The notes under the pieces are model-generated. The model saw only the letters and a program-made list of their open reading frames with translations, was not told the DNA's origin and ran no database searches. Positions 3,175 to 61,637 of a stretch of DNA of 64,000 bases are shown piece by piece (positions within the stretch are counted from its first letter, which is position 1; each line of letters begins with the position of its first letter). The stretch is taken from positions 248,001-312,000 of the IMG/VR virus record IMGVR_UViG_3300042261_002385; one strand, given 5' to 3'. Position numbers and translations under genes: made by a program.

Positions 3175-3816
3175 ATGAAACACATTAGAACATTTGAAAG
3201 TTATCGTATTAGAAAGAATAGAGAAGAAATTATCAAAGAATCTGTTCTTCAAGTAAACGATATCTATAAAGTTAAGACAATGATTGATATTCCACAGTCA
3301 TTAATCAATGCTTATGTGAAAAAAGTGAAAGATACTACAGGTAAAAATCTACGTCAATTTTTTGGTGATGTTGACATCGCTGAAGAAATTGTCAAATTCA
3401 TAAATATGAACAACTTAGACGTTGAGAAACTACCAGGAAACGCACTTATGGGTGGAGCACAAGGTCAAGGACAAAGTCAAGGACAAGCACAGGTTCAAAC
3501 TGACGCTGAAGCTCAGACACAATCACAAGGTCAAGAAGAAGGACAAGCACAAGGACAAGGTCAGGGACAAGCTCAGGGTCAGGGACAAGCACAAGGACAA
3601 GCTCAGGGTCAAGGACAAGCTCAGGGTCAAGGACAAGCTCAGGGTCAAGGACAAGCTCAGGGTCAAGGTCAAGCTCAGGGTCAAGGTCAAGCACAAGGAC
3701 AAGCTCAAGGACAAGCTAAAGAAGAAGAGTTTGAAGAACCACAAGGTCAAGCACAAGGTCAAGCACAAGCCCAGGGTGAAGAAGAAAAACTTCCAGAAGA
3801 AGAGGAAGAAGCTTAA
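3175..3816 (+). CDS. Putative internal head protein with a Gly/Gln low-complexity tail
   Basis: ATG at 3175 gives [10 protein letters not shown], then a ~90 aa globular part, GQAQGQ repeats and an acidic end. Confidence 0.6.
3540..3714 (+). repeat. 18-bp coding tandem repeat (GQAQGQ)n
   Basis: Tandem units of the type cagggtcaaggacaagct. Confidence 0.9.
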
Positions 3817-3881: not shown

Positions 3882-4496
3882 ATGAGATTTATTAAAACAT
3901 TTGAGGCATACAACGAAGATACTCTTATAATAGTAGATGTGCAAAAATCATTTAGGAAGTTTTTTTCAGAGATGTATCTTAATGAATTAAAAAAATACTC
4001 TAAAAACTTCAATAACGTTTATCAAATATGGGACAATCACATTGATGGAAAAAACGTAGATAAAGAATACCTTTATGATATAAATCCAACAATTCCTATT
4101 CACGATGACCTGTTTTATTTTCCCAACCAAAAAGATATAATTGAAAAACGATACAATTATAAAGTCGATGCGGATTTCTACAAAAAGATTTTAGATTCTG
4201 ATATTTACGAAGAGATTAGTAAAAAAGAAGAAGAGAAAACTCTTAAAAAGGGTGATGTCTTTCCAACAAAAGAAGGAACAATTATAACATTTATCAACAA
4301 TAATCATGTTTGGTTTCATTGCCCAAAGAAGTTATATGAACTACTCATAGAATTGAAAGGAAGAGATGTCGTAATAGTAGGTGGTGCAGATTCAGAATGT
4401 TTAGAAGATATAGTTACTACAGCCGAAAGTTTAGATGTTAAGATAAAAAGAAATTATAAATTTATTTACACAGCTTCAAGTTGTCCTATAAAATAG
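3882..4496 (+). CDS. Isochorismatase/cysteine-hydrolase-like protein
   Basis: LIIVDVQKSF near the N-terminus and VVIVGGADSECL near the C-terminus. Begins MRFIKTFEAY. Confidence 0.55.
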   Translation: MRFIKTFEAYNEDTLIIVDVQKSFRKFFSEMYLNELKKYSKNFNNVYQIWDNHIDGKNVDKEYLYDINPTIPIHDDLFYFPNQKDIIEKRYNYKVDADFYKKILDSDIYEEISKKEEEKTLKKGDVFPTKEGTIITFINNNHVWFHCPKKLYELLIELKGRDVVIVGGADSECLEDIVTTAESLDVKIKRNYKFIYTASSCPIK

Positions 4497-14321: not shown

Positions 14322-15068
14322 TTAATTTTTAAGTATAGGAATTACAACTTCTTCTACAAATTGTTTCATATCTTCAACCGATATTGTATCTAAAGTGTCT
14401 TTTGGAGTATGACAGTTAAATAATAGTTTGAAATCTAAGTAGGTATTATCATCCCATTTGACAATTGATTCTTCTTTATTCTGAGTAGGAGGTAGTGGAT
14501 TTATAACAACCGAGTCTATACCATTTCTTCTGAAAGTAACGGAGTCGTTAAATGGTGTTTTAACAATTGGACAATCAAAAATAGATTTGATATGATTAGT
14601 TAGATTTCCAGGATAATCACCTATGAAAAAGTATTTTCCTCCTTTACCAGTAAGTTCTAAATTTAATACCCATTCGATATTTCCGAAAAATCCATCATTT
14701 ATCAATTCAGAACATCTTTGAGACCCTAAACCACCAACTTCTTCACCATCTAATAAAACAACTGTAATCTCAGGCATCAATTTTTTTATCATAATAGCAT
14801 TAATAACAGACGCTGAGTTATCATTTGCATTATCTATATCAGGATTCACGATATCATGATGAGCAACTACCATTCTACTTGAGTTACCACGTAAGACTAT
14901 ATTAAAACAATTTGATTTACCAGATTGAAATGTGTCTAATTTCCATTCTATTCCAATAGAGTCAAGTAAATTAGTAATGTATTGAACTCTTGGAGTAGGT
15001 TCTAAACCATTTTTATAAACATTACCGATATTTCTAATGGAGCAGAACTCATATATCTTATCATACAT
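14322..15068 (-). CDS. M28-family zinc peptidase
   Basis: AHHD, ANDNSAS, DGEE.G..GS, NLE and CHT..DT motifs. The real start is the ATG at 15068, because the longer ORF call overlaps the tmRNA. Confidence 0.85.
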   Translation of the reverse strand: MYDKIYEFCSIRNIGNVYKNGLEPTPRVQYITNLLDSIGIEWKLDTFQSGKSNCFNIVLRGNSSRMVVAHHDIVNPDIDNANDNSASVINAIMIKKLMPEITVVLLDGEEVGGLGSQRCSELINDGFFGNIEWVLNLELTGKGGKYFFIGDYPGNLTNHIKSIFDCPIVKTPFNDSVTFRRNGIDSVVINPLPPTQNKEESIVKWDDNTYLDFKLLFNCHTPKDTLDTISVEDMKQFVEEVVIPILKN

Positions 15069-15079
15069 AGTGTATATAT

Positions 15080-15105
15080 AAAAAAACCCACTTAAAAAGT
15101 GGGTT
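15080..15105 (-). terminator. Intrinsic terminator after the tmRNA
   Basis: AACCCACT-TTTTA-AGTGGGTT followed by a T-run on the minus strand. Confidence 0.85.
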
Positions 15106-15113
15106 AATCTTTG

Positions 15114-15488
15114 TGGAGATGACGATGTACTGCCCATCGTGTCTTCCCTAGCTAACAATAATTATTCATTCACAGGCTTAGAAAGTTTCTCTAAACTTAC
15201 AAAGTAGTTAGTTGAACAACCCATCACTCTAACAATTCTGGTTTCACATTTTAAACTGTGTGATTCAGCTGGAGAATTTTTGCGATAAGCTTAAAAGATT
15301 AAACTACTGCTAGCTCTTCTACCTTAAGCATGTTGTTTTGTAGCGCCGCTACTAAATCTTCACGGGATGCTACTTCATTTGTTTTGCCATTTACGACTTT
15401 TGCCATCTAATTTATTAGTCGGTTACTTGACCATCCGACACCTGCATAATTACCACTACTCTATGAATCTATACTAAAAAACATCCCC
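15114..15488 (-). ncRNA. ssrA: tmRNA (one-piece, ~375 nt)
   Basis: GGGGAUG/CAUCUCC-A acceptor stem with G3.U70, T-arm ACGAUG-GGCAGUA-CAUCGU, P2 GCAGGU/GCCUGU with an AAGCCUGUGAA motif, and a tag frame UAAAU|GGC...UAA (15388-15299). CCA is not encoded. Confidence 0.9.
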
Positions 15489-15539
15489 ATAGTTTTATAA
15501 TTACAAATGTATATATAATATTTGAAAATATAAAAAAGT

Positions 15540-15806
15540 TTAGAAATTTTCAGAACCTTCTTCGAGTTCATACTCATCAGAATCTAAAGAATTTATAATA
15601 TTCTCAGCCTCTTCATAGGAATCATAATTAATCCAAAGAGAACCTTTACCAAATAATTCCTCAGCGTCAACCGCATCTTTATATGTTAAACCATCAGACA
15701 TCATTTTTGGTGTGAGAGCAAATATTCTAAAAGAATCACCAACTCTGTTTATAAAATATTTAACTTTATCGTTACTAAAATCTTCAAATAATTTAATGTA
15801 TTTCAT
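15540..15806 (-). CDS. Small protein with the MKYIKLFEDF N-terminal tag
   Basis: 88 aa, carries the shared N-terminal motif. Confidence 0.65.
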   Translation of the reverse strand: MKYIKLFEDFSNDKVKYFINRVGDSFRIFALTPKMMSDGLTYKDAVDAEELFGKGSLWINYDSYEEAENIINSLDSDEYELEEGSENF

Positions 15807-15820
15807 ATTAGTTCTTTTTT

Positions 15821-16402
15821 TTAGAAAGGCATGTTATCATCATCTAATCCTTCATCTAAAGTAAAACCAAAAGTAAGGATTCCTCTATTATCTTTTGACT
15901 GCCACATTTCAAATTCTGAATCATATTGAGCCAATATATCTCTTTTTAATTTGTTAGCGACTTCAAAAACTTTAATTACATTTCTAAGAGTTTCTTTTTT
16001 ACCCATGTAAACCTCTATTAAAATTTCATCATTTTTACGAGCGGTCACTCTTACATCTGAAACTCCAGCATTTCTAAACATCTGTCTTAAAAGATAAGTT
16101 AAATGTTCGATATCATCATCTTGTTCATCTTCATATATGTCATATTCATCGTCATCATCGTCATCATCAAATTTAGGATTTGAAGATTTTCTGCCATATT
16201 TGTTATTATCATCATCGTCATCATACCAATCATCAAAATCTCCATAATCTTTAGTAGAGTCATCAGCATAATCATAATCATCATCATCATCAGGCCATCT
16301 AGCTTCGTTTTTCTTATTAGCCGGTAAATTATCATTAAGATGACTTAAGTCATCTTTTCTAATATTTTCTTTAAGATAGTCTAAAAAATTATTTATGTTC
16401 AT
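15821..16402 (-). CDS. Acidic low-complexity protein with a small C-terminal alpha/beta domain
   Basis: Poly-Asp tracts in the N-terminal half. Confidence 0.6.
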   Translation of the reverse strand: MNINNFLDYLKENIRKDDLSHLNDNLPANKKNEARWPDDDDDYDYADDSTKDYGDFDDWYDDDDDNNKYGRKSSNPKFDDDDDDDEYDIYEDEQDDDIEHLTYLLRQMFRNAGVSDVRVTARKNDEILIEVYMGKKETLRNVIKVFEVANKLKRDILAQYDSEFEMWQSKDNRGILTFGFTLDEGLDDDNMPF

Positions 16403-17934
16403 TATCTCAATTCTATTTTTAAGTAAGTTTCACTAAAGAAACAATCATCCGCTATTTTATATTTTGCTAAGATTGTTTGAACTCTTATCAATGCATCATA
16501 TATTTCAGCCATATCAGACTCTTCTAAGTCTAAACTTACAAATATTCTATCGTCACTACCAACTACTTTAACATCTATACCAAAAACATTTTTCTTAACT
16601 TCATTAATTAGTTCTTTGTGTTTTGCAAACAACTCTTGATTGTATCCGACTTTTCTTTTGACTGGAAGATTATTCCAATCAACTTTTATAGAAGCTTCGG
16701 CTAATTTTTTCAAATAAGTTATATTCTGCATTTCAGTTCCTCTATGTTCATTATAATATCCAACAGATATGTTCGTGCACTCAGCTATATCTTCCATTAG
16801 AGATGCTGAATCAGTATAAACTCCAGTCGTATCTAAAGAAAGATTTAAACCATTTTTGTTATATTCATCACAAAGAGCTTGTGCAAAATCATTTGAACAA
16901 CATTGTCTACCTAATTGGTGAGTAATAACTGACGTGGTTCTTCTTCTATCAAAAGAAACACAATATTTAACATCTGTCAAATAGTCACATTTATCATATA
17001 CAGATGAAAGTGCATTTGAACCAATTCCTCCTCTTTCTTCTCCAATGAAGAAGTAGTAGATACCAGGAACATTGTTAGCCATCATATAAAGCATTACTGT
17101 AGTTCCAGCTTTATCATCGGCTCCAAGTATACTTGAACCATCTGTATAAATTATTTCATCACCTGAACCAGTCTTGATTAGTCTAAATGAATATCCCTCT
17201 TCCTCAACCCTTCCATTTGCTTGAAATAAACGAGTTGTTTTTTGTTCTCTGTCTGCAGTGTCTAAGTGACAAGTAAACATTACCTTTTGTTTATCATTAC
17301 CAATAATCTTATAATAATTACCGACTCTATCTTGTTTTAAATCAGGTAAGAATTTAAGCACTTCTTTTTCATGTCTACAATCAGAAAAATGTGGGTAAGT
17401 TTTAGTAGTAAGTGAAAGAAAAGTTGCTTTAACATCCTTCGGATTGTAACTAAATTCAGGAACAACTATTCTTTGAGCGGACGTGGTATCTTCTTCACCA
17501 ATATTATCAGCTACGATTGCGTTATATTGATGGATAAATGATTTAATCTCATCTTCTGTTAGTAGACCGGGCCAGTAATATCTAAAAAATTTACCAATCT
17601 TCATATCATACTTTTTATCAGCTATTTTCACTTCAAAACAGTATGGTTTTTTTGAAATAGTGACATCACTAATTCCCAATCCATTAAAATATTTAGAACC
17701 CTCTTCTCCTAACCAAAGCATTTCAAAGGCAAGATAGTTGTCATTATCTTCCATATTTTTTAATACTTTACAGAGGTCTTTTGATAATTTTATTTTGATA
17801 CCAGTATCTTTTGTAGATGACTTTGTGTCAAAAATTTCTTCTTTTGATTTATAACCACCACCTGTGTAATTACGTTCACCTGGGAAAGATTGAGTTCCAG
17901 CTTCAAATAGTTGATTATATTTAAATAATTCCAT
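16402..17934 (-). CDS. Zinc peptidase (M28/M20/M42 clan) with an unknown N-terminal domain
   Basis: CHLDT, LGADDKAG, GEERGGIGS, SFDRR, YTDS, NISVGYYNEH..E motifs. Confidence 0.85.
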   Translation of the reverse strand: MELFKYNQLFEAGTQSFPGERNYTGGGYKSKEEIFDTKSSTKDTGIKIKLSKDLCKVLKNMEDNDNYLAFEMLWLGEEGSKYFNGLGISDVTISKKPYCFEVKIADKKYDMKIGKFFRYYWPGLLTEDEIKSFIHQYNAIVADNIGEEDTTSAQRIVVPEFSYNPKDVKATFLSLTTKTYPHFSDCRHEKEVLKFLPDLKQDRVGNYYKIIGNDKQKVMFTCHLDTADREQKTTRLFQANGRVEEEGYSFRLIKTGSGDEIIYTDGSSILGADDKAGTTVMLYMMANNVPGIYYFFIGEERGGIGSNALSSVYDKCDYLTDVKYCVSFDRRRTTSVITHQLGRQCCSNDFAQALCDEYNKNGLNLSLDTTGVYTDSASLMEDIAECTNISVGYYNEHRGTEMQNITYLKKLAEASIKVDWNNLPVKRKVGYNQELFAKHKELINEVKKNVFGIDVKVVGSDDRIFVSLDLEESDMAEIYDALIRVQTILAKYKIADDCFFSETYLKIELR

Positions 17935-17950
17935 AGAGTATATATTAAAT

Positions 17951-18520
17951 TTAAATATGTATTATATTTCTATCTTTATTCTCTATGAATGCTCTACCCA
18001 CGGTCGGTTGATGAGATTCAATAAAAGCATCTTCTTCTTTGGTTCTATAACTTTTATTTTTTAGTTCTTTTATTTTATTTTCAACTTCGATTGGTGGATT
18101 AATACTCACCCTATCTTTGTAACACCAAACTATCTCAGCGAAATTGTTATCTTTGGCTTTGCTGTTCTTTTTAGCAATCTCTGCTGCTTTTTTTAGAATG
18201 TGGTCTGGAATAATATCATCTTTAATTGCTTTAACTAAAACGTGACTTCCCGGATATCCGGATGCATGTAACCAAATGTCCTGAACACTCGAAGCAACTC
18301 CTCCGATAGATTTAGCATATTTACCACAAAAATTACTAGTCAAAAAATGATTTGACTCTTTATTTCTACCCCAGTAAACATCATATGAATTATCAAGATT
18401 CAAATCGTCTATGATTTTTTTATGTTTTATATCAACACCACTCTTACTGAACTCTTTTAATTGACTGTTTATGAGATTTTCTTTTAATACAAAATCACTG
18501 TAATTTCTAGTTATCTTCAT
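17951..18520 (-). CDS. Stand-alone NFACT-R (RqcH/Rqc2 C-terminal RNA-binding) domain protein
   Basis: YWGRNKESNHFLT, DIWLHASGYPGSHVLVK and AAEIAKKNSKAK match RqcH VGKNN.QN..LT, DIWLH.K.IPGSHV and AA..AA..SKAK. Start is the ATG at 18520. Confidence 0.85.
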   Translation of the reverse strand: MKITRNYSDFVLKENLINSQLKEFSKSGVDIKHKKIIDDLNLDNSYDVYWGRNKESNHFLTSNFCGKYAKSIGGVASSVQDIWLHASGYPGSHVLVKAIKDDIIPDHILKKAAEIAKKNSKAKDNNFAEIVWCYKDRVSINPPIEVENKIKELKNKSYRTKEEDAFIESHQPTVGRAFIENKDRNIIHI

Positions 18521-18547
18521 AACATATATATAAATTATCTTAAACAA

Positions 18548-18571
18548 AAAACCCTCTAAAAAGAGGGTTTT
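18548..18571 (-). terminator. Intrinsic terminator
   Basis: AAAACCCTCT-AAAA-AGAGGGTTTT on the plus strand, with a T-run on the minus strand. Confidence 0.8.
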
Positions 18572-18592: not shown

Positions 18593-19321
18593 TTAACTCA
18601 AATTGAATACAAAACTTTCAAGTTGACCGAAGTTAGTAGCACTAACAGGAACAGTAATAGTCGTTACACCACCAGACCAAGTTCCACTATAATATGCAGT
18701 TGAATGTGTCCAAGCATTTGAAGGTGTGCCTGAACCTGAAGGTAGAATCTTTGCAATTTGGTTATTGTAGTAAGCTCCAGTTGAAGCGGGTGCTTGTATA
18801 ATAAGTGAATTACCACTTGTTGTTGCTGTAGCTCCAGTAGGTAATGCAACAATGTTAGCCGCTAAAGTAGCAACGGCAGTTTCTGCACTTTGAGTAGCTG
18901 AAAAAGTATATCCAAATGGTCCAAAAATATTCCAGTTTGATGCTGTTACAGAACCAGTACCGTGTGATCCCCAGACTTGTATTTTGACGTTTGTTGCGTG
19001 AGCTAGAAGAGCTCCTGAACCTCCTGTAGCTGTTCCACCGAATGTAAAAGTAGCGGTCGCTGGTGAAAAAGTAGGTGCTACACCATTCGCTCCAGTAAGG
19101 TTATTAGATGATGTTCCATTAACATTCGCTGAAAATGTAAAATTACCACTATCTTCAGTTAAAAATCGTCCATCTGTCAAAGATATAGTTCTAGATTCCG
19201 TGAATCCAGCAACTGTAAGAGATGTTTCACCTCTTAGTCTCAAAGCTGTAACATCAAAAGTGATGACATCAGTTGTGCTGTTATAACTAGCAGAGTTAAT
19301 GTTTATGTAAGGTCTTGACAT
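18593..19321 (-). CDS. Ser/Thr/Gly-rich beta protein downstream of the capsid gene, candidate decoration protein
   Basis: Structural-protein composition, its own late-type promoter, and its position next to the capsid gene. Confidence 0.45.
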   Translation of the reverse strand: MSRPYININSASYNSTTDVITFDVTALRLRGETSLTVAGFTESRTISLTDGRFLTEDSGNFTFSANVNGTSSNNLTGANGVAPTFSPATATFTFGGTATGGSGALLAHATNVKIQVWGSHGTGSVTASNWNIFGPFGYTFSATQSAETAVATLAANIVALPTGATATTSGNSLIIQAPASTGAYYNNQIAKILPSGSGTPSNAWTHSTAYYSGTWSGGVTTITVPVSATNFGQLESFVFNLS

Positions 19322-19435: not shown

Positions 19436-21208
19436 TTAGTTCAAGTATTGATTACCATCAACAACTTTAATAGTCATAAATTGTTTTTGTGGATACCAAC
19501 CAACTTCAGTTACTGCATATCTAGATCTTAGTAACATTCTTGGTGCGAATGTTGCCTCAGAAATGATAGAGATTGATTGAGCCATCAAATAAGGAACGAA
19601 AATGATACCTGGTTGGTCAGGATTGTTCTTTCTACCAAGAACGATTCTGTTATCGTTATATCTCATATATGGGTCAACATAGATAGAAATATCACCGATA
19701 GAACCTACTGGGTAAAGTTGACCAGAAGCATTCATTTTAGCTTTAACTGGATTAATAGTATAACCAGAGATATCAGAAAGAGCTGCAGCAAGACCCCCGT
19801 TTGTGATAAGGTATTGAGCTGGACCTACACGACCTTCAGTAGCGATGTAGTTAGAAGCGTGAGCAATCTTAGTGATAAGTTTTCTTTGAACAGCGTGAGT
19901 TGTCTCACCACCGATACCACCACCTGCAGTTACATATGATGTATCTAAGTCAAAGATTGTTGGACTAGTAACTCCTGTGTAAGCAGCAGGACCAGAGTAA
20001 AGTGGAGCTGTAGTTCTGTTCAAATCACCCAATTCAAAGATTTTAGCAACGATTTGCTTAGAAATTGTTTGAGATAATTCGTTAACAAGAATTGATTCCA
20101 TTTTTTGAACGATATCCATACCTGTGTTAGCTTTGATATCTTCGATTTCAGTTCTTCTAAGAGCTGAAGATACTTCAATAGTACCTACTGCTACTGACTT
20201 AGAAGAAATTTTAGGACCGATAACTCCAGCATAACTGTTATCATCTGTGTCTCTATCCATTGGATAGTTACCATTGAAACCATCACCACCTTGAGTCCAG
20301 TTTGCAGAGAAACCAGGGATGTGATCTTCAAGAGCTGAAATCAACTCAATTGAAGCGAATCCACTGTTAATTGTAATTCCAGCTACACTTGTGATTTGAG
20401 AAATCATTGATTGTGTAGGGTTGAATGAGTTTCTATTTTGGTCAAAACTCCACATCGCAAGTGTTCCTGTAGTAGAAGTGTAAGGATTTGTTCCTGTATG
20501 AGCAGTGTTAGCTTGTCTGTAAGCTTTGAACATAGGGAAACCATCGATACGAGAGAAACCTAAGAACTCAACAATACCTTGTTTAGAAGCTGTTCCATTC
20601 AATGTAGTTGAAATAGTTGAACCTAAGTTATTTTGTCCTGTAGTTCCTAATGAGAAAAAGAATTGTCCATTTTGTAAACCACCAGAAGACTGAAGGATAG
20701 TAGCTCCGTTTCCAGTTTGCATAGCAGTTGCTAACGTAGATGATGTAGCACCAGCGTTTAATTTAAATACTTGTGGTCTTTCATCAGCGTCACCAGATTT
20801 AGTGTCGTCATAACGGAAATCTACATAAAGTAAATCGATTTTCGGACCTGGAGATGGCTTAACAGCAACAAGGTCAAGTCCGATAGTTTGAGCTGCGATT
20901 TTCATTGCAACTGGTAATAAGTTTTGACCAACATCACCAGAACCAGCAACACCACCTGAACCATATGAGAATGATGTAGCAGAGTTACCGTAAGGTGAAG
21001 TTTGACCAGCAAGTGTAGATGGTTGTGGAGATACAACACTACCCATACCTGATACGTTAGAAGCGTTAACGTAAGCGTTCTCGTTGATTGAGTGGAATTC
21101 AGCATATTCAGCCATCCATTCCATTCTATCACCAGTAACACCCATGTTTTCCAAAACTGGAGACCACTTCTTAATAGCTTTTGATTTGTCTATTCTAATG
21201 TGTGACAT
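19436..21208 (-). CDS. gp23: Major capsid protein, T4 gp23-like
   Basis: KKWSPVLE, AAQTIGLDLVAVKP, EDIKANTGMD, ELSQTISKQI, VGSIG..YVDPY and FVPY..PRMLLRSRY motifs. Confidence 0.95.
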   Translation of the reverse strand: MSHIRIDKSKAIKKWSPVLENMGVTGDRMEWMAEYAEFHSINENAYVNASNVSGMGSVVSPQPSTLAGQTSPYGNSATSFSYGSGGVAGSGDVGQNLLPVAMKIAAQTIGLDLVAVKPSPGPKIDLLYVDFRYDDTKSGDADERPQVFKLNAGATSSTLATAMQTGNGATILQSSGGLQNGQFFFSLGTTGQNNLGSTISTTLNGTASKQGIVEFLGFSRIDGFPMFKAYRQANTAHTGTNPYTSTTGTLAMWSFDQNRNSFNPTQSMISQITSVAGITINSGFASIELISALEDHIPGFSANWTQGGDGFNGNYPMDRDTDDNSYAGVIGPKISSKSVAVGTIEVSSALRRTEIEDIKANTGMDIVQKMESILVNELSQTISKQIVAKIFELGDLNRTTAPLYSGPAAYTGVTSPTIFDLDTSYVTAGGGIGGETTHAVQRKLITKIAHASNYIATEGRVGPAQYLITNGGLAAALSDISGYTINPVKAKMNASGQLYPVGSIGDISIYVDPYMRYNDNRIVLGRKNNPDQPGIIFVPYLMAQSISIISEATFAPRMLLRSRYAVTEVGWYPQKQFMTIKVVDGNQYLN

Positions 21209-21287: not shown

Positions 21288-23387
21288 TTAAATGTTTTTG
21301 AATCTTTCTAAAATTGCTTGAGCTTCTTTATCAGAAAGTTTATCCTCTTGGATAAGAGCTTCGTGAGAAACTAATTTTTTAGTAACAGATTCATTCTTTT
21401 TGAGATTTCTAGTCAACCAGAAATGCTCAACTTGTGATTCAGTCTTCAATACATCTTCTGGATAAAGTCTAGCTTGTGACAAGATAGATTTTTTAGAAGT
21501 GTCGTTCAACTGTTCCCAGATTGGCTTAACGTTTTCAGGCATCAATCTGATTACTCTTTCTTCAAGAGATTCATTCTTTGTAGACAGTGCTTCAGCAATC
21601 AATGTAAGAACTTCCTTCTGTGTAAAATAACTTCTTTCGTTTATGTGAAGTTTAACAGTTTCTTGTTCATCGTTAGATAATGCATAAAAGCTATCAACTT
21701 GTGACTTGTTTAAGAATTTTAAGAAATTCAAGTCAGTTGTTTCAGAAACTTTACGTTTTTTAGCTTCTTCAATTAATTTATTAATAGACTCAGATAATTC
21801 AGAATCATCGTGACCATGAACCTCATGAGATTCGTGTCCATATTTTTCTTCGTTGTCATCATCATTGTTTTCGTGAGAATAAGCTTCTTCGTCATGTGAA
21901 GCAGGAACTCCGTGATAATTTTCTTCATTATCATCATCGTTGTTGTGATTCTCTTCTTCGTGATTTTCAAAACCATAAGCTGATAGCGAAGCGAAAGCCT
22001 CTTCATCATGGTTTTCAAATAATTTACCACCTTTAGAATTTAATTTTTCAACAATCATTCCTTGATAAGAAATTGATCTATCAAGATTTTCAGCGATATA
22101 CTCAGAGTAGGCGATGTTATCATCTAAATGCTCCGCGATATACTCAGAGTAAGCGATGTTACCTTCAACATGCTCAGCTAAGTATTCAGAATACGCGATA
22201 GAGTTATCAACGTGCTCAGCTAAGTATTCAGAGTAAGCGATGTTTTTATCAAGATTCTCAGCAATATACTCAGAGTAAGCGATGTTTTTATCAAGATTCT
22301 CAGCAATATACTCAGAGTAAGCGATGTTCTTATCAAGGTTTTCTGCTAAGTATTCTGAGTAAGAAATGTTTTTGTCTAAGTTTTCAGCGATATACTCAGA
22401 ATAAGAGATATTCTTATCTAAGTTTTCAGCTAGATACTCAGAATATTCAATATTCTTATCTAAATTTTCAGCAACATACTCAGTATAGTTAATTGCTTTT
22501 TCAAGATTTTCTGCTAAATAGTCATTATGTTTAGCAAGTTTTTCAGTTGTGTTTCTAAGAGATTTGTTCTCATTAACAACAACTTGGATTTTTTCAGCTA
22601 AGTAGTCAAGATATTTAACTACTTGTGAATTAGTTGAGTTCAATTCTTCGTAGTATTCAAGTAATTGCTCTAATTTCTTAGGAGCCATATTACCTTTAGA
22701 AATTGCACTCTTAACTTCTTTTTTAGTTGAAGCAATCTCGTTTACTAAATACTTTGAATAATCAGTCAACTGTTTCTTAGTAACAAAGTCGTTTCTGTTC
22801 ATGTTGAATAATTCATTTATTTTTGACTCGTCGGACATTTCATATATCCTAAAGTTAGATTTTGGGTTTGTATAACCTAAAGACTCATTAAGTGTTTTTA
22901 CTGACATTTTTGCTGAAGCAAAACCTGGATCAGCTACAATGTCATATGTGAATAATTTTTTCAATGAAACAGATCCGTCAGATTCAGTGATACCAGCCGC
23001 TCTAGAAGAAACGAATACCGGACAACCATCATCAACTAATGCTTTCGCTTCTTTACCCCAATAAGTGCTAAGAAGTCTAATTTCACCAGCAACAATGTTT
23101 TGTTCTTTAAGATAGTTTGCTTTAGTGATAATGTGTGATGCTCTTGCTAAAGAAGTGTCAAAAACATCTGGGTGATCAAACTCACCATAAACAGCTCCTA
23201 AACTGTTCATTCTTTCATTCAACTCATCCAACGCTGGTAAGAATCTGTCTGCTGTATAGATACGTTCATTACGGTTTTTCACTCCAAATTCAGTGAAAGT
23301 TCCACCTAAAACGTAATCTTTTTTACCAGATGCATTTTCTCGTATTAGAGCATTCGTTGAATTTTCTACGATTAATACTGATTTCAT
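21288..23387 (-). CDS. gp21: Prohead protease (gp21-like) fused to a scaffold/core protein
   Basis: KNRNERIY, GEFDHP, SHII, VSSRAAG and TYDIVADPGF in the N-terminal ~170 aa, followed by a long coiled-coil region. Confidence 0.92.
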   Translation of the reverse strand: MKSVLIVENSTNALIRENASGKKDYVLGGTFTEFGVKNRNERIYTADRFLPALDELNERMNSLGAVYGEFDHPDVFDTSLARASHIITKANYLKEQNIVAGEIRLLSTYWGKEAKALVDDGCPVFVSSRAAGITESDGSVSLKKLFTYDIVADPGFASAKMSVKTLNESLGYTNPKSNFRIYEMSDESKINELFNMNRNDFVTKKQLTDYSKYLVNEIASTKKEVKSAISKGNMAPKKLEQLLEYYEELNSTNSQVVKYLDYLAEKIQVVVNENKSLRNTTEKLAKHNDYLAENLEKAINYTEYVAENLDKNIEYSEYLAENLDKNISYSEYIAENLDKNISYSEYLAENLDKNIAYSEYIAENLDKNIAYSEYIAENLDKNIAYSEYLAEHVDNSIAYSEYLAEHVEGNIAYSEYIAEHLDDNIAYSEYIAENLDRSISYQGMIVEKLNSKGGKLFENHDEEAFASLSAYGFENHEEENHNNDDDNEENYHGVPASHDEEAYSHENNDDDNEEKYGHESHEVHGHDDSELSESINKLIEEAKKRKVSETTDLNFLKFLNKSQVDSFYALSNDEQETVKLHINERSYFTQKEVLTLIAEALSTKNESLEERVIRLMPENVKPIWEQLNDTSKKSILSQARLYPEDVLKTESQVEHFWLTRNLKKNESVTKKLVSHEALIQEDKLSDKEAQAILERFKNI
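22065..22526 (-). repeat. Eleven tandem 42-bp (14-aa) repeats of the type SEY(I/L)AENLDKNIAY
   Basis: 462 bp = 11 x 42, read from the protein and the DNA. Confidence 0.92.
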
Positions 23388-37847: not shown

Positions 37848-40800
37848 TTAAATTTCTATCCAAGTATTATCAGGACAGAAGTATATAGTATTACTAGATA
37901 TCGCAAAACCAACTATTCTAATTATATCAAGTGTTGCAGTAGGAGCAGATTGTGTCATCGAACCAGCGACTGTGGATAAGTAAATTGCTCCTCCAACAGT
38001 CCAAGACCAAGAAGTATTTTCTACATAACCTCTAAGTAGCATACCAGAACTAGGTGTAGCACCTAAAGCTAACGATATAAGACCAGTTGCCGAAGACGCC
38101 GCATCGGCATCCGTAGCAGCCCAAGTAGAAGTAGATGTAAAATAGTAGGTGCTAAATGTCGCAATCGAAGTAGCAGCATTACCAAATGTTACAATGTCAC
38201 CATAACCACCATTAGCACTTAATACTGTTAATGGATTGTGTGTGAACCTATATCCACCGGATACACTTACTGTTCCTGTTACACCAAGTGTATTACCATC
38301 AAATGTTAAATTCGATTCAACTGTTGCGTTAGGAGCAGTAGAATCTAAAGTTATAAGACCATTATTAGTAGTCCCGGTCAGTGATAATAATCCACTAGTT
38401 CCAGAGGTTCCATTGGCACCATTAACTACCCATGATAAAGTATATGTTCTTCCACTTGTCAGTGAGCCATTACCACTTACATATGTTACAGAAATATCAA
38501 AATAAGTTGTGTTATTTTGCATATTAGAAATTCGAAAATGACCAATAACACTATTACTTCCAACTTCAGTTATCTGTAAAGTAGTTCTGGTAACGTATGA
38601 ACTAGTAATAAGTAAATTCCACCAAGCATTATAATTAGTAGTGTTTGAGTAATCTGTTTGGTGCACTGAAACCTTAATAATAGAAGATATAGTACTGGAA
38701 TCAGTTCTAAAGTATGTAGCTCCTGGGTCAGACCAAGCGAGAGTTGAGTCATAAAACCATCTACCACTATTTGAACCGTCATTTCCAGTTCCGGAAGTTC
38801 CTGATGTTCCAGCGCCTGATGTTCCTGATGTTCCGGTGGTTCCGGAAGAACCGGAAGTTCCTGATGTTCCTGATGTTCCAGTGGTTCCGGAAGAACCGGA
38901 AGTTCCTGATGTTCCAGTGGTTCCGGAAGAACCGGAAGTTCCTGATGTTCCTGATGTTCCAGTGGTTCCGGAAGAACCGGAAGTTCCTGATGTTCCAGTG
39001 GTTCCGGAAGAACCGGAAGTTCCTGATGTTCCTGATGTTCCAGTGGTTCCGGAAGAACCGGAAGTTCCAGTTGTGCCAGAAGTTCCTCTTGTCCCAGAAG
39101 ATCCACTAGTGCCGGAAGATCCACTAGTGCCGGAAGATCCACTTGAACCAGAAGATCCACTTGAACCAGAAGATCCACTTGAACCAGAAGATCCACTTGA
39201 ACCTGAAGATCCACTTGTGCCGGATGTTCCAGCAGCTGAGTTAATTGTTAATATATTTCCATTTGAGTCAAATCCAAGAGCTCCAAGCGCGGAACCTGGG
39301 AAATTACTTACATTATTATAACTTGGTAGTTGTAATTGACCAGTGATGTGATTTATTTGTAAATCCACAGCACTTGAAGTTGTATCAGATCCTTTTAATA
39401 TTCTAAAAGAATTCTGATAATTATCAATAGAAGATGCAGTGTTATAAACACCACCTCCAGACTGAAGTGTGATTTGACCTCCCTCACCAGAACCTGATCT
39501 TGCTCCTAAAAATAAATTTGCTTCAGTAGATGTCGTAGTTGTTCCAATAGCGACTGAGATTGAATTCTGAGTCGAAGACTGAGTAACTGTCAAATATGTC
39601 GCACCAACAGCAGAGTTTACCGAACCGTCAGATAACAGGACACGAAGGTTTCCAGGATTCGAAATTGTGTTAAAACCAGTTCCAGATGTACCACTTGTAC
39701 CCGAGCTACCACTTGAACCAGAGCTACCACTTGAACCTGAAGATCCACTTGAACCAGAGCTACCACTTGTACCCGAGCTACCACTTGAACCAGAGCTACC
39801 ACTTGAACCTGAAGATCCACTTGAACCAGAGCTACCACTAGTGCCGGAAGTTCCACTTGTGCCAGAAGATCCACTTGAACCTGAAGATCCACTTGAACCA
39901 GAGCTACCACTAGTGCCGGAAGTTCCACTTGTGCCAGAAGATCCACTTGAACCTGAAGATCCACTTGAACCAGAGCTACCACTAGTCCCGGAAGTTCCAG
40001 AACTACCAGAAGTTCCAGATGAACCACTAGTGCCGGATGTTCCGGGAACTGAAGCTGTCCAGAATGCCAAACCTGTCGCATCGGACATTAATATGTAGTT
40101 TGCCTGAGCTCCGGTAGTTAACTTAATTTGAGAGGCTGTAATTCCATTAACTCTCAAATTAGAATAAGACGAAATAGTAATATCACCCTGAGTCGTTGCA
40201 GAATTATTAGTTGAAACAGCAGCAAACTCATCAGCTGATTCATCCCAAATAAATGCTTGAGTTGCTCCAGTTCCTCGATTCACCATAAATCCAGAGTCTA
40301 ATGTTGGTGACCCAGATTGAGTTGATGCTAAAAGTATCAACGGATCTTGAACAGTAAGATTTGTTGTGTTGACTGTTGTAGCCGTTCCACTTATAGTCAA
40401 ATTACCAGAGACAGTGACGTTACCAGTTACCGCTAGTGTTGTGCCATCAAAGGTTAGATTAGATTCAACAGTAGCGTTTGGAGCTGATCCATCTAAAGTT
40501 ATAACTCCATTATTTGTTGTTCCAGTTAGTGATAATAAACCGCTAGAACCGGAGGTTCCTCTTGTACCTGAGGATCCAGAGGAACCACTAGAACCGGATG
40601 TTCCAGAAGATCCACTAGAACCTGATGAACCGGAAGAACCACTTGAACCTGATGTTCCACTTGTTGCGGAAGTTCCAGATGAACCAGAAGAACCACTAGA
40701 ACCAGAAGTTCCAGAGGAACCACTAGAACCAGAAGATCCACTAGAACCGGATGTCCCAGAGGAACCACTAGAACCAGAAGATCCGCTAGAACCGGATGTC

Positions 40801-42935: not shown

Positions 42936-43032
42936 TTATACAATTCTTTTTTCACTTTCCAAAAGAAATCAACATTATATATTAATTTAGTAAGACCTAA
43001 AAAGACTTATATTAATTTTTTCTGATCAAATA

Positions 43033-58985: not shown

Positions 58986-59294
58986 TTAATTAATTGAATT
59001 TTTATTCAAAGTATGAAGGTCTAAAAAATCGTCCTCTTCTATTTCTCTTTCTACGCTTAAGCCTTCTATTTCATCATCATCTAAACGGTCCCCTACAGTT
59101 TCATACCATTCATCTTTGCTCAATTCTTCAATTGTTGAACTTTTACAGAATTTACAGTTATCAACCTCGTTGTTTAGAACTTTCCATAGAGCATCACAAT
59201 CATCACAGTGATAATATAGTGTCAAATCTGCTTTAGATGCTAATGGCAAAGTCTGGCTAAAATCAAAAGTCTCAAATTTCTTAATCCATCTCAT
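58986..59294 (-). CDS. Small zinc-ribbon protein with the MRWIKKFETF tag
   Basis: CxxC...CxxC. Confidence 0.65.
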   Translation of the reverse strand: MRWIKKFETFDFSQTLPLASKADLTLYYHCDDCDALWKVLNNEVDNCKFCKSSTIEELSKDEWYETVGDRLDDDEIEGLSVEREIEEDDFLDLHTLNKNSIN

Positions 59295-60923: not shown

Positions 60924-61637
60924 TTATTTTTTGAAATCTACGAAACTTTTTATTCCTCTCATCTCATCTTCTAAATCTTTGTTAGCTAAATGACCTTCAG
61001 TTTCTTCATGAGATGGCTCTTCATAATGTGTGTAATTGAGGTCTTCACTTGGAACATCGTGACCTGCAACAAAGTTAAAAACATGTTCAATGTTCTCAGC
61101 TGCTACAGAGATGTGGTCTGAAGCCCAATCGTGCTCAGACAACATGTTATCTAAAGTGTGCTCATCCATTTCTAGCATTTCATCTACTAATCTTTTGATA
61201 GTCTCTAAATTTGAGAAAAACATATAATTTTGAGTTTCTTGATGTTCTCTAAGTCTTTTAACTGTTCTAGATCTCTTGTAGTTTCTAGACTCACTTAGTA
61301 ATGCTTCATCGTTATTATAAGCATCCTGTTCCTCGTGATCCTTACACATAAGTCTCAATTCTTCATCTGAACACATCTCTAATTCATCTTCTGAGTAACC
61401 ACATCTGCAAAGGTAGTTACACATTGATTCTCTGTCCATAGAATTCATATTTTCGTTATGTGAATTCATATGAGAGTGATCATCGTGACTATCAGCCATA
61501 GTTCTACACATCATTTCTAACTCATCATCAGACTTGTCATGTAATTCATGCATGCTACAACCACATACATTACATAAGTATTTACACATCTCTTCTCTAT
61601 CTTGAGAATAAGATTCAAATTTTTTAATTAACCTCAT
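60924..61637 (-). CDS. Cys/Met/His-rich protein with an internal duplication and the MRLIKKFESY tag
   Basis: Two DRExMCxYLC..C..EL...SDxEL.MC repeats and a C-terminal HDWASDHI domain. Confidence 0.6.
   Translation of the reverse strand: MRLIKKFESYSQDREEMCKYLCNVCGCSMHELHDKSDDELEMMCRTMADSHDDHSHMNSHNENMNSMDRESMCNYLCRCGYSEDELEMCSDEELRLMCKDHEEQDAYNNDEALLSESRNYKRSRTVKRLREHQETQNYMFFSNLETIKRLVDEMLEMDEHTLDNMLSEHDWASDHISVAAENIEHVFNFVAGHDVPSEDLNYTHYEEPSHEETEGHLANKDLEDEMRGIKSFVDFKK

What the first reader, a model, noticed from the sequence alone, without database searches (positions are those of the whole stretch)
17951..18520. Stand-alone RqcH NFACT-R domain two genes from the tmRNA
The motifs align closely with the C-terminal domain of RqcH/Rqc2/NEMF, but the NFACT-N, HhH and coiled-coil parts that position tRNA-Ala are absent. 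It could be a dominant-negative decoy blocking host RQC at the 50S stalk base, or an independent RNA binder. It has a late-type promoter and a loose version of the N-terminal tag, so it may be virion-delivered.
Basis: partly seen in the sequence, partly recalled or inferred. Interest (0 to 1): 0.7.

Follow-up and report, generated by a model that had tools for sequence, protein, structure and literature searches.

The report
Phage stand-alone NFACT-R ribosome-rescue-type protein
A giant freshwater phage carries, right behind its capsid gene, a small protein that is only the ribosome-docking end domain of the bacterial quality-control factor RqcH; it probably acts on stalled host ribosomes and may be packed into the virus head.

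Summary
Window 17951-18520 (-) encodes a 189-aa protein whose only recognisable part is an NFACT-R domain: Pfam is above its cut-off, a family profile hits B. subtilis RqcH at E 1e-8, and the AlphaFold model matches only NFACT-R domains. The 436-kb phage genome has no NFACT-N.

The "tmRNA" is real but divergent. It is a 375-nt RNA at 15114-15488 (-), three ORFs downstream, missed by ARAGORN and Rfam. Support comes from covariation, a G3:U70 acceptor pair, a tag frame, a phage SmpB gene and abundant metatranscriptome contigs.

The order capsid gene, NFACT-R, tmRNA-like RNA recurs in about 30 related megaphage contigs. The N-terminus resembles the T4 capsid-targeting and cleavage signal.

The decoy idea is weak. 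NFACT-R contacts the A-site finger, not the stalk base, and host RqcH is unproven. The pocket residues N57, H85 and H93 are invariant; their proposed counterparts line the active pocket of yeast Jlp2, a solo NFACT-R peptidyl-tRNA release factor.

Best reading: a Jlp2-like binder or releaser of stalled large subunits, possibly capsid-delivered. No function was tested.

The parts
17951..18520 (-). ORF of 189 aa: stand-alone NFACT-R protein
   Evidence: ORF list and sequence. Pfam PF05670 33.1 bits, above the 29.8 cut-off. Profile hit to RqcH 445-537, E 1e-8. AF2 pLDDT 90.6. Fold matches only to NFACT-R domains.
18479..18520 (-). N-terminal tag, residues 1-14 (MKITRNYSDFVLKE). It resembles the T4 capsid-targeting and cleavage signal: Y7, F10, L12-x-E14 followed by N15.
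   Evidence: M1 and F10 are invariant and E14 is at least 90% conserved in the family. Residues 1-12 are disordered in the model. Orthologues carry the exact motif Y-x-x-F-[IL]-x-E-N. T4 CTS = MKTYQEFIAE, with residues 4 and 7 for targeting and 8 and 10 for processing. The motif is enriched about 7-fold at N-termini genome-wide.
18266..18280 (-). DIWLH (D81, W83, H85): the DWH motif of NFACT-R
   Evidence: Invariant in 23 homologues. In RqcH the motif is needed for 50S binding at the A-site finger. By residue spacing, H85 matches Jlp2 H44, which is essential for peptide release; this equivalence is my inference.
18242..18250 (-). G91-S92-H93 (GSH) motif. H93 lies 8 residues after H85, the same spacing as H52 after H44 in Jlp2.
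   Evidence: G91 and H93 are invariant. Aligned to PGSHV of RqcH. Jlp2 pocket residues are listed.
18525..18533 (-). TTATATATA, a variant of the phage-wide upstream motif AATATATA, 4 nt before the ATG
   Evidence: Sequence. AATATATA lies within 100 nt upstream of 131 of 484 ORFs, out of 169 sites in the genome. TTATATATA lies upstream of 27 ORFs.
18548..18571 (-). Intrinsic terminator between the upstream gene (18593-19321) and the NFACT-R gene
   Evidence: sequence.
16402..17934 (-). Downstream neighbour, 510 aa, peptidase-like (M28-type)
   Evidence: phrog_4191 'peptidase', E 1.8e-65. Pfam M28 is weak. Syntenic in relatives.
15821..16402 (-). Acidic 193-aa protein with an exact CTS-like N-terminus (MNINNFLDYLKE|N)
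   Evidence: Syntenic in relatives.
15540..15806 (-). 88-aa protein with the commoner tag form (MKYIKLFEDF)
15114..15488 (-). Divergent tmRNA-like RNA, about 375 nt. It has a 7-bp acceptor stem with G3:U70, a discriminator A, a T-arm, a long P2 helix and a tag frame ending ...EELAVV*.
   Evidence: Sequence. 41 viral contigs carry it. The alignment of 22 distinct copies and RNAalifold give 60 pairs, 25 with compensatory double changes. nhmmer finds one copy per genome, also in LR745206 and LR756502. Metatranscriptome contigs cover only 15118-15456, at depth up to about 467. Phage SmpB scores 175 bits. ARAGORN and Rfam do not call it.
15085..15105 (-). Intrinsic terminator directly after the tmRNA-like RNA
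   Evidence: Equivalent hairpins occur in relatives.
19436..21208 (-). T4 gp23-type major capsid protein, upstream anchor of the conserved block
   Evidence: Pfam Gp23, E 7e-29. Synteny.
21288..23387 (-). Head maturation (prohead) protease fused to a repeat-rich, scaffold-like part
   Evidence: phrog_207, E 1.3e-30. Pfam S77 is weak.

Best explanation
Shown:
- The gene encodes a stand-alone NFACT-R protein of a T4-like freshwater megaphage.
- The domain is closest in sequence to the C-terminal domain of bacterial RqcH. Its solo architecture parallels eukaryotic Jlp2/CCDC25.
- It keeps the conserved NFACT-R pocket: N57, D81-x-W83-x-H85 and G91-S-H93.

Inferred mechanism:
- The protein docks on the intersubunit face of host large ribosomal subunits, or of stalled ribosomes, that still hold peptidyl-tRNA. 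RqcH's NFACT-R docks at the A-site finger in the same way.
- There it either hydrolyses the peptidyl-tRNA, as the solo NFACT-R factor Jlp2 does with its equivalent His, or at least occupies the site. Either action would free or control ribosomes during infection.
- It would work alongside the phage's own trans-translation set: a divergent tmRNA three ORFs downstream and a phage SmpB.

Inferred delivery:
- The gene sits in the head-gene block, directly after the capsid genes.
- Its family has an N-terminus with the same spacing as the T4 capsid-targeting and protease-cleavage signal (Y-x-x-F-[IL]-x-E|N).
- The phage has a T4-type prohead protease.
- The protein may therefore be packed into the head, trimmed after E14 and injected with the DNA.
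For: Domain identity:
- Pfam is above its cut-off. The profile hits RqcH 445-537 at E 1e-8.
- AF2 pLDDT is 90.6. Fold hits are only NFACT-R domains, including CCDC25 at TM 0.55-0.57 and Jlp2 at TM 0.53.

Solo architecture:
- No NFACT_N exists in the genome, and there is a single NFACT-R.

Pocket conserved:
- N57, D81, W83, H85, G91, H93 and S120 are invariant over 23 homologues that are only 41-90% identical.
- The DWH motif is needed for RqcH-50S binding at H38.
- Jlp2 H44 is essential for peptide release on 60S and 80S. N27 and H52 line the same pocket, and their spacing matches N57, H85 and H93.

Rescue context:
- Phage SmpB scores 175 bits and is 88-100% conserved across many megaphage contigs.
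- The tmRNA-like RNA has covariation and abundant RNA contigs.
- The order MCP, NFACT-R, 2-3 kb, tmRNA-like RNA recurs in about 30 loci, including the 634- and 642-kb genomes.

Delivery:
- The CTS-like motif is present; the T4 CTS is documented; a head maturation protease is encoded.
- Tagged genes run from NFACT-R to the tmRNA-like RNA.
- The protein diverges fast (25-62% identity) while MCP stays at 67-89%. T4 internal proteins are similarly poorly conserved.
Against: - No function was tested, and the release-factor precedent is one preprint on a eukaryotic protein that is only about 12-18% identical.
- The same DWH residues serve binding in RqcH, so their conservation cannot separate catalysis from docking.
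- Some syntenic orthologues have lost the His and the GSH motif (DIWLC, DVWLG, DVFLQ, DILIC, DIWMK). There the retained role cannot be His-dependent.
- The tag occurs on 53 of 484 ORFs scattered over the genome. Most of these proteins have no known domain, so equating the tag with capsid targeting is an analogy.
- This particular protein has a one-residue-longer spacing than the exact motif.
- Closeness to the tmRNA may only reflect conserved gene order in the head block.
- No NFACT-R mRNA was seen in the metatranscriptomes laid. Coverage of protein genes was near zero, so this is uninformative.
- The host is unknown.
Confidence: 0.4

Rival explanations
1. Internal head protein that binds the packaged genome. 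The NFACT-R fold is used as a nucleic-acid (dsDNA) binder, as in CCDC25. The protein is packed through its N-terminal signal and co-injected, for example to protect or organise the DNA. It has no ribosomal role.
For: - The best solved-structure matches are CCDC25 and its dsDNA complexes (8woh, 7eof).
- The gene lies in the head block after MCP and has a CTS-like N-terminus.
- The protein is basic, pI 9.0, and diverges fast, like the poorly conserved T4 internal proteins.
- Orthologues that lost the DWH His keep both position and tag.
Against: - Most orthologues keep the whole RqcH-type pocket (N, DxWxH, GSH, SKAK) under strong constraint. A generic DNA binder would not need it.
- Sequence similarity is to RqcH (40-45% in the domain), not to CCDC25 (about 18%).
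Confidence: 0.2
2. Decoy or inhibitor of host ribosome quality control. The solo domain occupies the RqcH NFACT-R site on obstructed 50S and blocks Ala-tailing.
For: It retains the DWH motif that RqcH needs for 50S association. It lacks the tRNA-positioning NFACT-N and HhH parts.
Against: - The site is the A-site finger, not the stalk base.
- Host RqcH is unproven. Related phages are predicted to infect Bacteroidetes, and the B. thetaiotaomicron control lacks NFACT_N and NFACT-R.
- RqcH also holds on through CC-M at uL11/H44, so a single-domain competitor would be weak.
- No benefit to the phage is evident.
Confidence: 0.12
3. Partner of the phage tmRNA or tRNAs. NFACT-R would act as a binder of the tRNA acceptor or CCA end, as proposed for ThiI+DUF814 and modelled for Jlp2. 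It would protect, load or regulate the neighbouring tmRNA-like RNA.
For: - The gene and the tmRNA-like RNA are conserved 2-3 kb apart in about 30 loci.
- The NFACT-R fused to ThiI is predicted to bind tRNA (PMC4075521).
- Jlp2 modelling puts the CCA-peptidyl end in the pocket.
- The genome encodes 28 tRNAs.
Against: - Linkage may be mere synteny of the head block.
- SmpB, the known tmRNA partner, lies about 185 kb away.
- There is no direct evidence of any kind.
Confidence: 0.08

Closest known systems
NFACT-R domain of bacterial RqcH (B. subtilis YloA; PDB 7aqc, 7as8, 8s1u)
   Same: - Same fold.
- Same motifs: GxNxxxN, DIWLH, PGSHV and SKAK.
- Best sequence match: profile E 1e-8 and 40-45% identity to RqcH-type domains.
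   Different: - No NFACT-N, HhH or coiled-coil/M domain in the protein or genome.
- It has an extra N-terminal helix, a 12-16-residue insert before DIWLH and a two-helix insert near the C-terminus.
- It therefore cannot recruit tRNA-Ala the way RqcH does.
Jlp2 (yeast) / CCDC25 (human) solo NFACT-R proteins
   Same: - Solo NFACT-R architecture of similar size (about 190-208 aa).
- Highest TM-scores of all fold matches, 0.53-0.57.
- Pocket His and neighbours conserved, with the same spacing.
- Jlp2 acts on stalled ribosomes as a release factor.
   Different: - Only 12-18% identity.
- It lacks the C-terminal coiled coil.
- It probably arose independently from a bacterial RqcH-type domain.
- The Jlp2 D46 position is not conserved (S87 here).
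- Its activity is untested.
- It is encoded by a virus and carries an N-terminal targeting-like tag.
T4 internal proteins (IPI-III) and Alt: capsid-targeted, protease-trimmed, injected proteins
   Same: - The N-terminal signal has the spacing aromatic-x-x-aromatic-[IL]-x-E (T4: MKTYQEFIAE).
- The phage has a T4-type capsid protein and prohead protease.
- The protein is basic and diverges fast.
   Different: - No sequence relation beyond the signal.
- Packaging and cleavage were not shown.
- The tag is far more widespread here, on 53 ORFs.
tmRNA-SmpB encoded by huge phages (Al-Shayeb et al. 2020, PMC7162821)
   Same: Huge phages are known to carry tmRNA and SmpB. This genome has SmpB and a tmRNA-like RNA.
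   Different: - This RNA is not recognised by ARAGORN, the tool used in that study, nor by Rfam.
- Its T-loop (GGCAGUR) is non-canonical.
- Its tag is long, about 30 aa.

Membership tests
NFACT-R domain (Pfam PF05670 / DUF814) | Profile match above the curated cut-off | tested here: met
   33.1 bits against 29.8. The genome-level search gives 32 bits, over the cut-off.
NFACT-R domain (Pfam PF05670 / DUF814) | NFACT-R fold | tested here: met
   AF2 pLDDT 90.6. All significant Foldseek hits are NFACT-R domains.
NFACT-R domain (Pfam PF05670 / DUF814) | Conserved D-x-W-x-H, G-S-H and downstream Ser (SKAK) motifs of the NFACT lineage | tested here: met
   D81, W83, H85, G91, H93 and S120 are invariant. 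They align to RqcH DIWLH, PGSHV and SKAK.
RqcH / Rqc2 / NEMF (full NFACT proteins) | N-terminal NFACT-N domain | tested here: not met
   Absent from the 189-aa protein and from the whole genome.
RqcH / Rqc2 / NEMF (full NFACT proteins) | HhH pair and long coiled coil with an M domain | tested here: not met
   The model shows only one 20-residue N-terminal helix and a short helical hairpin. No such Pfam hits.
Jlp2 / CCDC25 family (solo NFACT-R release factor) | Solo NFACT-R protein without other NFACT domains | tested here: met
Jlp2 / CCDC25 family (solo NFACT-R release factor) | Catalytic His (Jlp2 H44) and pocket residues | tested here: inconclusive
   H85, H93 and N57 are invariant, with the same spacing as H44, H52 and N27. 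The equivalence was inferred from motifs; no residue-level alignment to Jlp2 was obtained. The D46 position is not conserved.
Jlp2 / CCDC25 family (solo NFACT-R release factor) | C-terminal coiled coil; orthology to the eukaryotic family | tested here: not met
   There is no C-terminal coiled coil. Sequence is closer to bacterial RqcH domains (40-45%) than to CCDC25/Jlp2 (12-18%).
Jlp2 / CCDC25 family (solo NFACT-R release factor) | Peptidyl-tRNA release on stalled ribosomes | not testable with these tools
   Needs biochemistry.
T4-type capsid-targeted internal proteins | N-terminal CTS ending in an [IL]-x-E cleavage site | tested here: inconclusive
   This protein has Y7-x-x-F10-V-L-K-E14, one residue longer than the exact motif. 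Orthologues have the exact Y-x-x-F-[IL]-x-E-N.
T4-type capsid-targeted internal proteins | T4-type prohead protease and gp23 capsid in the same genome | tested here: met
   phrog_207 head maturation protease; Pfam Gp23.
T4-type capsid-targeted internal proteins | Presence in virions with a processed N-terminus | not testable with these tools
   The phage is uncultured and no proteome is available.
tmRNA (for the neighbouring RNA, 15114-15488) | tRNA-Ala-like acceptor stem with G3:U70, a T-arm and a discriminator A | tested here: met
   The third pair is G:U in 21 of 22 sequences. Acceptor and T-stem pairs show compensatory changes. The T-loop sequence is non-canonical.
tmRNA (for the neighbouring RNA, 15114-15488) | Internal tag reading frame ending in a stop, downstream of a PK1 region and enclosed by a long P2 helix | tested here: met
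   A conserved frame ends ...ELV*, ELA* or LAVV*. The P2 helix and PK1 hairpin show covariation. The resume codon is not determined.
tmRNA (for the neighbouring RNA, 15114-15488) | Recognition by the curated models (Rfam clan CL00001, ARAGORN) | tested here: not met
tmRNA (for the neighbouring RNA, 15114-15488) | SmpB partner, and expression as a stable RNA | tested here: met
   SmpB scores 175 bits. RNA contigs are confined to 15118-15456 at high depth.

The most novel reading that the evidence does not exclude
Freshwater megaphages pack a Jlp2-like peptidyl-tRNA release factor into their heads and inject it with the DNA. It would be a solo NFACT-R domain captured from a bacterial RqcH. It would clear host ribosomes that stall when host mRNA is destroyed, working with a phage tmRNA-SmpB pair. 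If true, this would be the first NFACT-R release factor outside eukaryotes and the first capsid-delivered ribosome-rescue enzyme. It would also suggest that the conserved NFACT-R pocket is catalytic across life, RqcH/NEMF included.
Probability: 0.2. Interest if true: 0.85.

Novelty: new variant of a known kind. Interest (0 to 1): 0.66.

Why it matters
- Stand-alone NFACT-R proteins were uncharacterised until a recent preprint made yeast Jlp2 a peptidyl-tRNA release factor.
- A large and diverse viral family of solo NFACT-R proteins would give that idea an independent test outside eukaryotes. The family has at least 50 clusters at 50% identity carrying the phage tag. It is absent from PHROGs and from cellular species representatives.
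- It would add a third piece to the trans-translation set (tmRNA and SmpB) that huge phages carry.
- It points to a T4-like capsid-targeting system in megaphages, which would define their injected proteome.
- The neighbouring RNA shows that standard tmRNA finders miss a whole phage tmRNA lineage.

Tried and rejected
- **tmRNA finders.** ARAGORN at default and lowered thresholds, and Rfam at gathering and E-value thresholds, gave no credible tmRNA call. The low-threshold ARAGORN placements were nonsense. The RNA was established by comparative analysis instead.
- **Cellular relatives.** A scan of genome contigs with the family profile returned only Streptococcus RqcH, so no cellular solo relatives and no host clue.
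- **Host relatives.** The genome search 'relatives' is not available for a virus record. I could not survey RqcH across Bacteroidota.
- **Host from SmpB.** The SmpB homologue search returned only near-identical phage copies.
- **Closest full-length relatives.** They carry names from Caldithrix, Chloroflexota and Firmicutes, which does not identify a donor.
- **Tagged proteins.** Pfam on ten large tagged proteins gave nothing useful, so the tag's role could not be read from its cargo.
- **Sigma-70 promoters.** The scan was at chance level.
- **CCDC25-DNA literature.** The search found no paper on the DNA-binding residues.
- **'Provirus' label.** GC content is uniform and no host flank is visible. 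I treat the label as an artefact.
- **Not run.** I built no covariance model, because about 370 positions exceeds the practical calibration time. I did not run the count of structure pairs, because it needs a long typed structure string; the per-pair counts were used instead. I ran no complex-prediction job, because no protein-protein binding claim is made.
Full report
**What is there.** On the minus strand an ORF runs from ATG 18520 to the stop at 17951-17953 and encodes 189 aa. The longer TTG-initiated reading from 18547 overlaps an intrinsic terminator (18548-18571) and is unlikely. Pfam NFACT-R_1 (PF05670) matches above its curated cut-off: 33.1 against 29.8 bits, E 8.8e-8, residues 79-141. 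A profile of 23 homologues matches the NFACT-R domain of B. subtilis RqcH (residues 445-537) at E 1e-8 over query residues 33-139. The motifs GKNxxxN, DIWLH, PGSHV and SKAK line up.

An AlphaFold2 model built on that alignment is confident: mean pLDDT 90.6, pTM 0.84, with only residues 1-12 disordered. Its significant fold matches, in the PDB and in AlphaFold-DB Swiss-Prot, are exclusively NFACT-R domains. They are CCDC25 (TM 0.55-0.57), RqcH on the 50S, the FBPS C-terminal half, Jlp2 (TM 0.53), NEMF, Rqc2 and archaeal aRqcH. The domain assignment is secure.

**It is truly stand-alone.** The protein has no NFACT-N, HhH or coiled-coil/M part. The window belongs to a 436,265-bp virus record (31% GC, estimated 95% complete). 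That record has no NFACT_N match and only this one NFACT-R. Compared with the RqcH domain, the protein has three additions:
- an N-terminal helix (residues 7-26);
- a 12-16-residue insert before DIWLH;
- a two-helix insert (residues 144-170) before the last strand.

**Who carries it.** The capsid protein is gp23-like. It is 70% identical to those of the 634-kb and 642-kb "huge phage" genomes LR745206 and LR756502. Those genomes belong to the Mahaphage clade, with predicted Bacteroidetes hosts (PMC7162821). The phage is widespread in lake and other freshwater metagenomes. Close homologues of the protein (188-205 aa, 41-99% identity) occur on metagenomic contigs of up to 492 kb.

An exhaustive profile-free search found 317 relatives. 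Among the 173 proteins returned by the two searches, 76 are short (230 aa or less). Of these, 51 carry the phage-type N-terminal tag and 60 keep DxWxH. The remaining 97 are longer, mostly RqcH-type proteins of 450-600 aa, whose domain is 40-45% identical. Named examples come from Caldithrix, Chloroflexota and Firmicutes.

The family is absent from PHROGs. It is also absent from one genome per prokaryotic species, apart from Streptococcus RqcH itself. The ESM Atlas lists automatically named clusters of short NFACT-R proteins in Bacteria, Uroviricota and Nucleocytoviricota. Solo NFACT-R proteins are therefore catalogued, but I found no study of them in phages.

**Gene neighbourhood.** The block is head maturation protease/scaffold, gp23 capsid protein, NFACT-R, a peptidase-like protein of about 450-610 aa, an acidic protein of about 170-190 aa, a conserved non-coding stretch of about 375 nt, then NADAR. 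It recurs in every related locus with enough flank, about 30 loci including LR745206 and LR756502. This window has two extra genes, at 18593-19321 and 15540-15806.

The NFACT-R orthologue is the fast-evolving member of the block: 25-62% identity, against 67-89% for the capsid protein. Most orthologues are compact forms of 127-140 aa with a canonical DIW[LM]H...GVPGSHVVIRV. A minority have lost the His and the GSH motif (DIWLC, DVWLG, DVFLQ, DILIC, DIWMK) while keeping position and tag.

**The "tmRNA".** ARAGORN and Rfam report no tmRNA in the window, the genome or related loci. The genome's 28 tRNAs all lie elsewhere. Reading the 380-nt gap downstream nevertheless shows several tmRNA features:
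- 5'-GGGGAUG (15488-15482) pairs with CAUCUCC (15121-15115), including a G3:U70 wobble.
- A discriminator A and a T-arm-like hairpin follow.
- There is a GAUUCG-type D-loop analogue.
- An internal frame ends ...EELAVV*.
- A terminator follows at 15085-15105.

A pattern from this RNA found 41 viral contigs. Twenty-two distinct copies align at 76% mean column identity, although the flanking proteins are much more divergent. RNAalifold gives 60 pairs, 25 of them with compensatory double changes. They form the 7-bp acceptor (G:U at pair 3 in 21 of 22), a 6-bp T-stem (up to 13 double changes at one pair), a long P2-like helix that encloses the coding part, and a PK1-position hairpin.

An nhmmer profile finds exactly one copy in this genome, and one each in LR745206 and LR756502 about 2 kb downstream of their NFACT-R genes. 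The genome encodes a strong SmpB (175 bits), which is 88-100% conserved across many megaphage contigs. In three freshwater metatranscriptomes, assembled RNA contigs lie only on 15118-15456, at depth up to about 467. One is a 340-nt contig with no differences. The flanking protein genes are at or near zero, which rules out DNA carry-over.

It lies three ORFs from the NFACT-R gene here and two in relatives. The resume codon is not settled. GUC-GUA-AAU-GGC is invariant at the start of the frame.

**The tag.** Fifty-three of 484 predicted ORFs (11%) start with M-[KR]-x-[ILV]-[KR]-x-[FY]-x-x-[FY]. Only 4 of 2,129 internal Met residues are followed by the same pattern. A sub-form, [FYW]-x-x-[FYW]-[ILVM]-x-E within the first 18 residues, occurs in 20 ORFs against 2.7 expected.

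This sub-form has the spacing of the T4 capsid-targeting sequence MKTYQEFIAE (PMC8442874). In that sequence residues 4 and 7 drive targeting and residues 8 and 10 drive cleavage by the prohead protease after Glu (PMC9026906). The NFACT-R family consensus is M-x-x-I-K-x-Y-x-x-F-[L/I]-x-E-N. M1 and F10 are invariant and E14 is at least 90% conserved, although the segment is disordered. This window's copy has one extra residue (YSDFVLKE|N).

The acidic protein two genes downstream has the exact motif (MNINNFLDYLKE|N). The capsid protein has a similar ...EFHSINE|NAY... where a gp23-type propeptide would end; that is my reading. The genome has a T4-type head maturation protease. Capsid targeting is therefore a reasonable inference, but still an analogy. 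The tagged genes are scattered over the genome, and ten large ones gave no informative Pfam hits.

**The promoter claim.** AATATATA is a striking phage motif. It has 169 sites in the genome, and 131 ORFs have one within 100 nt upstream, often less than 10 nt from the ATG. It precedes capsid, protease, portal-region and tail genes, but also genes all over the genome, so it does not mark "late". The NFACT-R gene has the variant TTATATATA 4 nt before its ATG, just after a terminator. The gene probably starts its own transcription unit. Its timing is unknown.

**How it most likely works.** Two published facts frame the mechanism. First, in B. subtilis RqcH the NFACT-R domain sits at the A-site finger (H38). 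Its DWH motif is required for 50S association, whereas the stalk base is held by the CC-M domain (bioRxiv 10.1101/2020.09.03.281279; PMC8012679). Second, yeast Jlp2, the homologue of CCDC25 and a solo NFACT-R protein, directly releases peptides from peptidyl-tRNA on 60S and 80S complexes. Jlp2 H44 is essential for that release but not for ribosome binding. N27, D46 and H52 line the same conserved pocket, which is modelled to hold the CCA-peptidyl end (bioRxiv 10.1101/2025.09.04.673968).

By motif spacing, Jlp2 N27, H44 and H52 correspond to N57, H85 and H93 here, and all three are invariant. This equivalence is my inference. I could not obtain a residue-level alignment to Jlp2, and the CCDC25 motif is from memory. 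The D46 position is not conserved.

I therefore favour a Jlp2-like factor that docks on peptidyl-tRNA-bearing large subunits or stalled ribosomes and releases or occupies them. It would sit within a phage rescue set, since tmRNA-like RNA and SmpB are present but RF-1/ArfB, Pth and S4/RqcP are not. It may also be delivered from the capsid.

Shown: domain, fold, solo state, conserved pocket, synteny, the tag, tmRNA expression and SmpB. Inferred: ribosome binding, hydrolysis, packaging and cleavage.

**Rivals.**
- A DNA-binding internal head protein. CCDC25-dsDNA complexes are the top structural hits, the protein has pI 9.0, and His-less orthologues persist.
This is possible only if the host has RqcH. 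The one Bacteroidota control genome lacks it, and the proposed site was wrong.
- A partner for the acceptor end of the tmRNA or of tRNAs. Linkage is the only support.

**Novelty and verdict.** The domain family and the solo architecture are known, and tmRNA and SmpB in huge phages are known. Four things are new:
- a large tagged viral family of solo RqcH-type NFACT-R proteins, fixed next to the capsid gene;
- its possible reading as a Jlp2-like rescue factor;
- the T4-like targeting signal in megaphages;
- a tmRNA lineage invisible to the standard finders.

I rate this a new variant of a known kind, interest about 0.66.

Noticed in passing
window 15114-15488 (-); also L061:11321-11702 and L062:11352-11731: A divergent tmRNA-like RNA that ARAGORN and Rfam miss. 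It is conserved in at least 41 viral contigs, has strong covariation and a non-canonical T-loop (GGCAGUR), encodes a tag of about 30 aa, and is abundant in freshwater metatranscriptomes. The resume codon is undetermined.
   Followed up: yes
own genome G000:C1:79293-79718 (-) (L014:1498-1932): Phage-encoded SmpB (175 bits), 88-100% identical across more than 100 metagenomic clusters on contigs up to 522 kb. It is far more conserved than the NFACT-R protein.
   Followed up: partly
whole genome G000; in the window e.g. 3175-3816 (+), 3882-4496 (+), 15540-15806 (-), 58986-59294 (-), 60924-61637 (-): An N-terminal tag M-[KR]-x-[ILV]-[KR]-x-[FY]-E-x-[FY] and its variants occur on 53 of 484 ORFs. A sub-form, [FY]-x-x-[FY]-[ILV]-x-E, occurs on 20 ORFs and has the spacing of the T4 capsid-targeting sequence. 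Almost all cargo proteins have no known domain.
   Followed up: partly
whole genome; in the window e.g. upstream of 17934, 21208, 23387, 28371, 30535 and 42935: The upstream motif (T)AATATATA has 169 sites, and 131 ORFs have one within 100 nt upstream. In 57 cases it ends less than 10 nt from the ATG, which suggests very short or absent leaders.
   Followed up: partly
window 15500-15515 (-), upstream of the tmRNA-like RNA; same place in most related loci: A conserved TAcaTTTG / TAtcTTTG box about 15-25 nt before the RNA 5' end. It resembles the Bacteroidota -7 promoter element TAnnTTTG (consensus from my own knowledge) and is consistent with a Bacteroidota host.
   Followed up: no
window 14322-15158 (-): The long readings of this M28-peptidase ORF (TTG 15158 or ATG 15137) overlap the tmRNA-like RNA and its terminator. 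The real start is probably the ATG at about 15068 (MYDKIYEF...).
   Followed up: partly
L023, L036, L046, L050, L057 (syntenic NFACT-R orthologues): In some related phages the orthologue has lost the DxWxH His and the GSH motif, but keeps the tag and the position after the capsid gene.
   Followed up: partly
window 37848-52200 (-): Two giant ORFs (1695 and 3055 aa) lie in a stretch of raised GC (up to 0.44, against 0.31 for the genome), with many long overlapping ORFs in other frames. They look like repeat-rich fibre-type proteins.
   Followed up: no
own genome G000:C1:37118-37204 (-): ARAGORN reports a tRNA with a four-base anticodon (agta) next to a tRNA-Met. None of the 28 phage tRNAs is tRNA-Ala.
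   Followed up: no
window 16402-17934 (-) and 14322-15068 (-): Two M28-type peptidase-like genes flank the tmRNA-like RNA inside the head-gene block. The first is conserved in synteny across the clade (phrog_4191).
   Followed up: no
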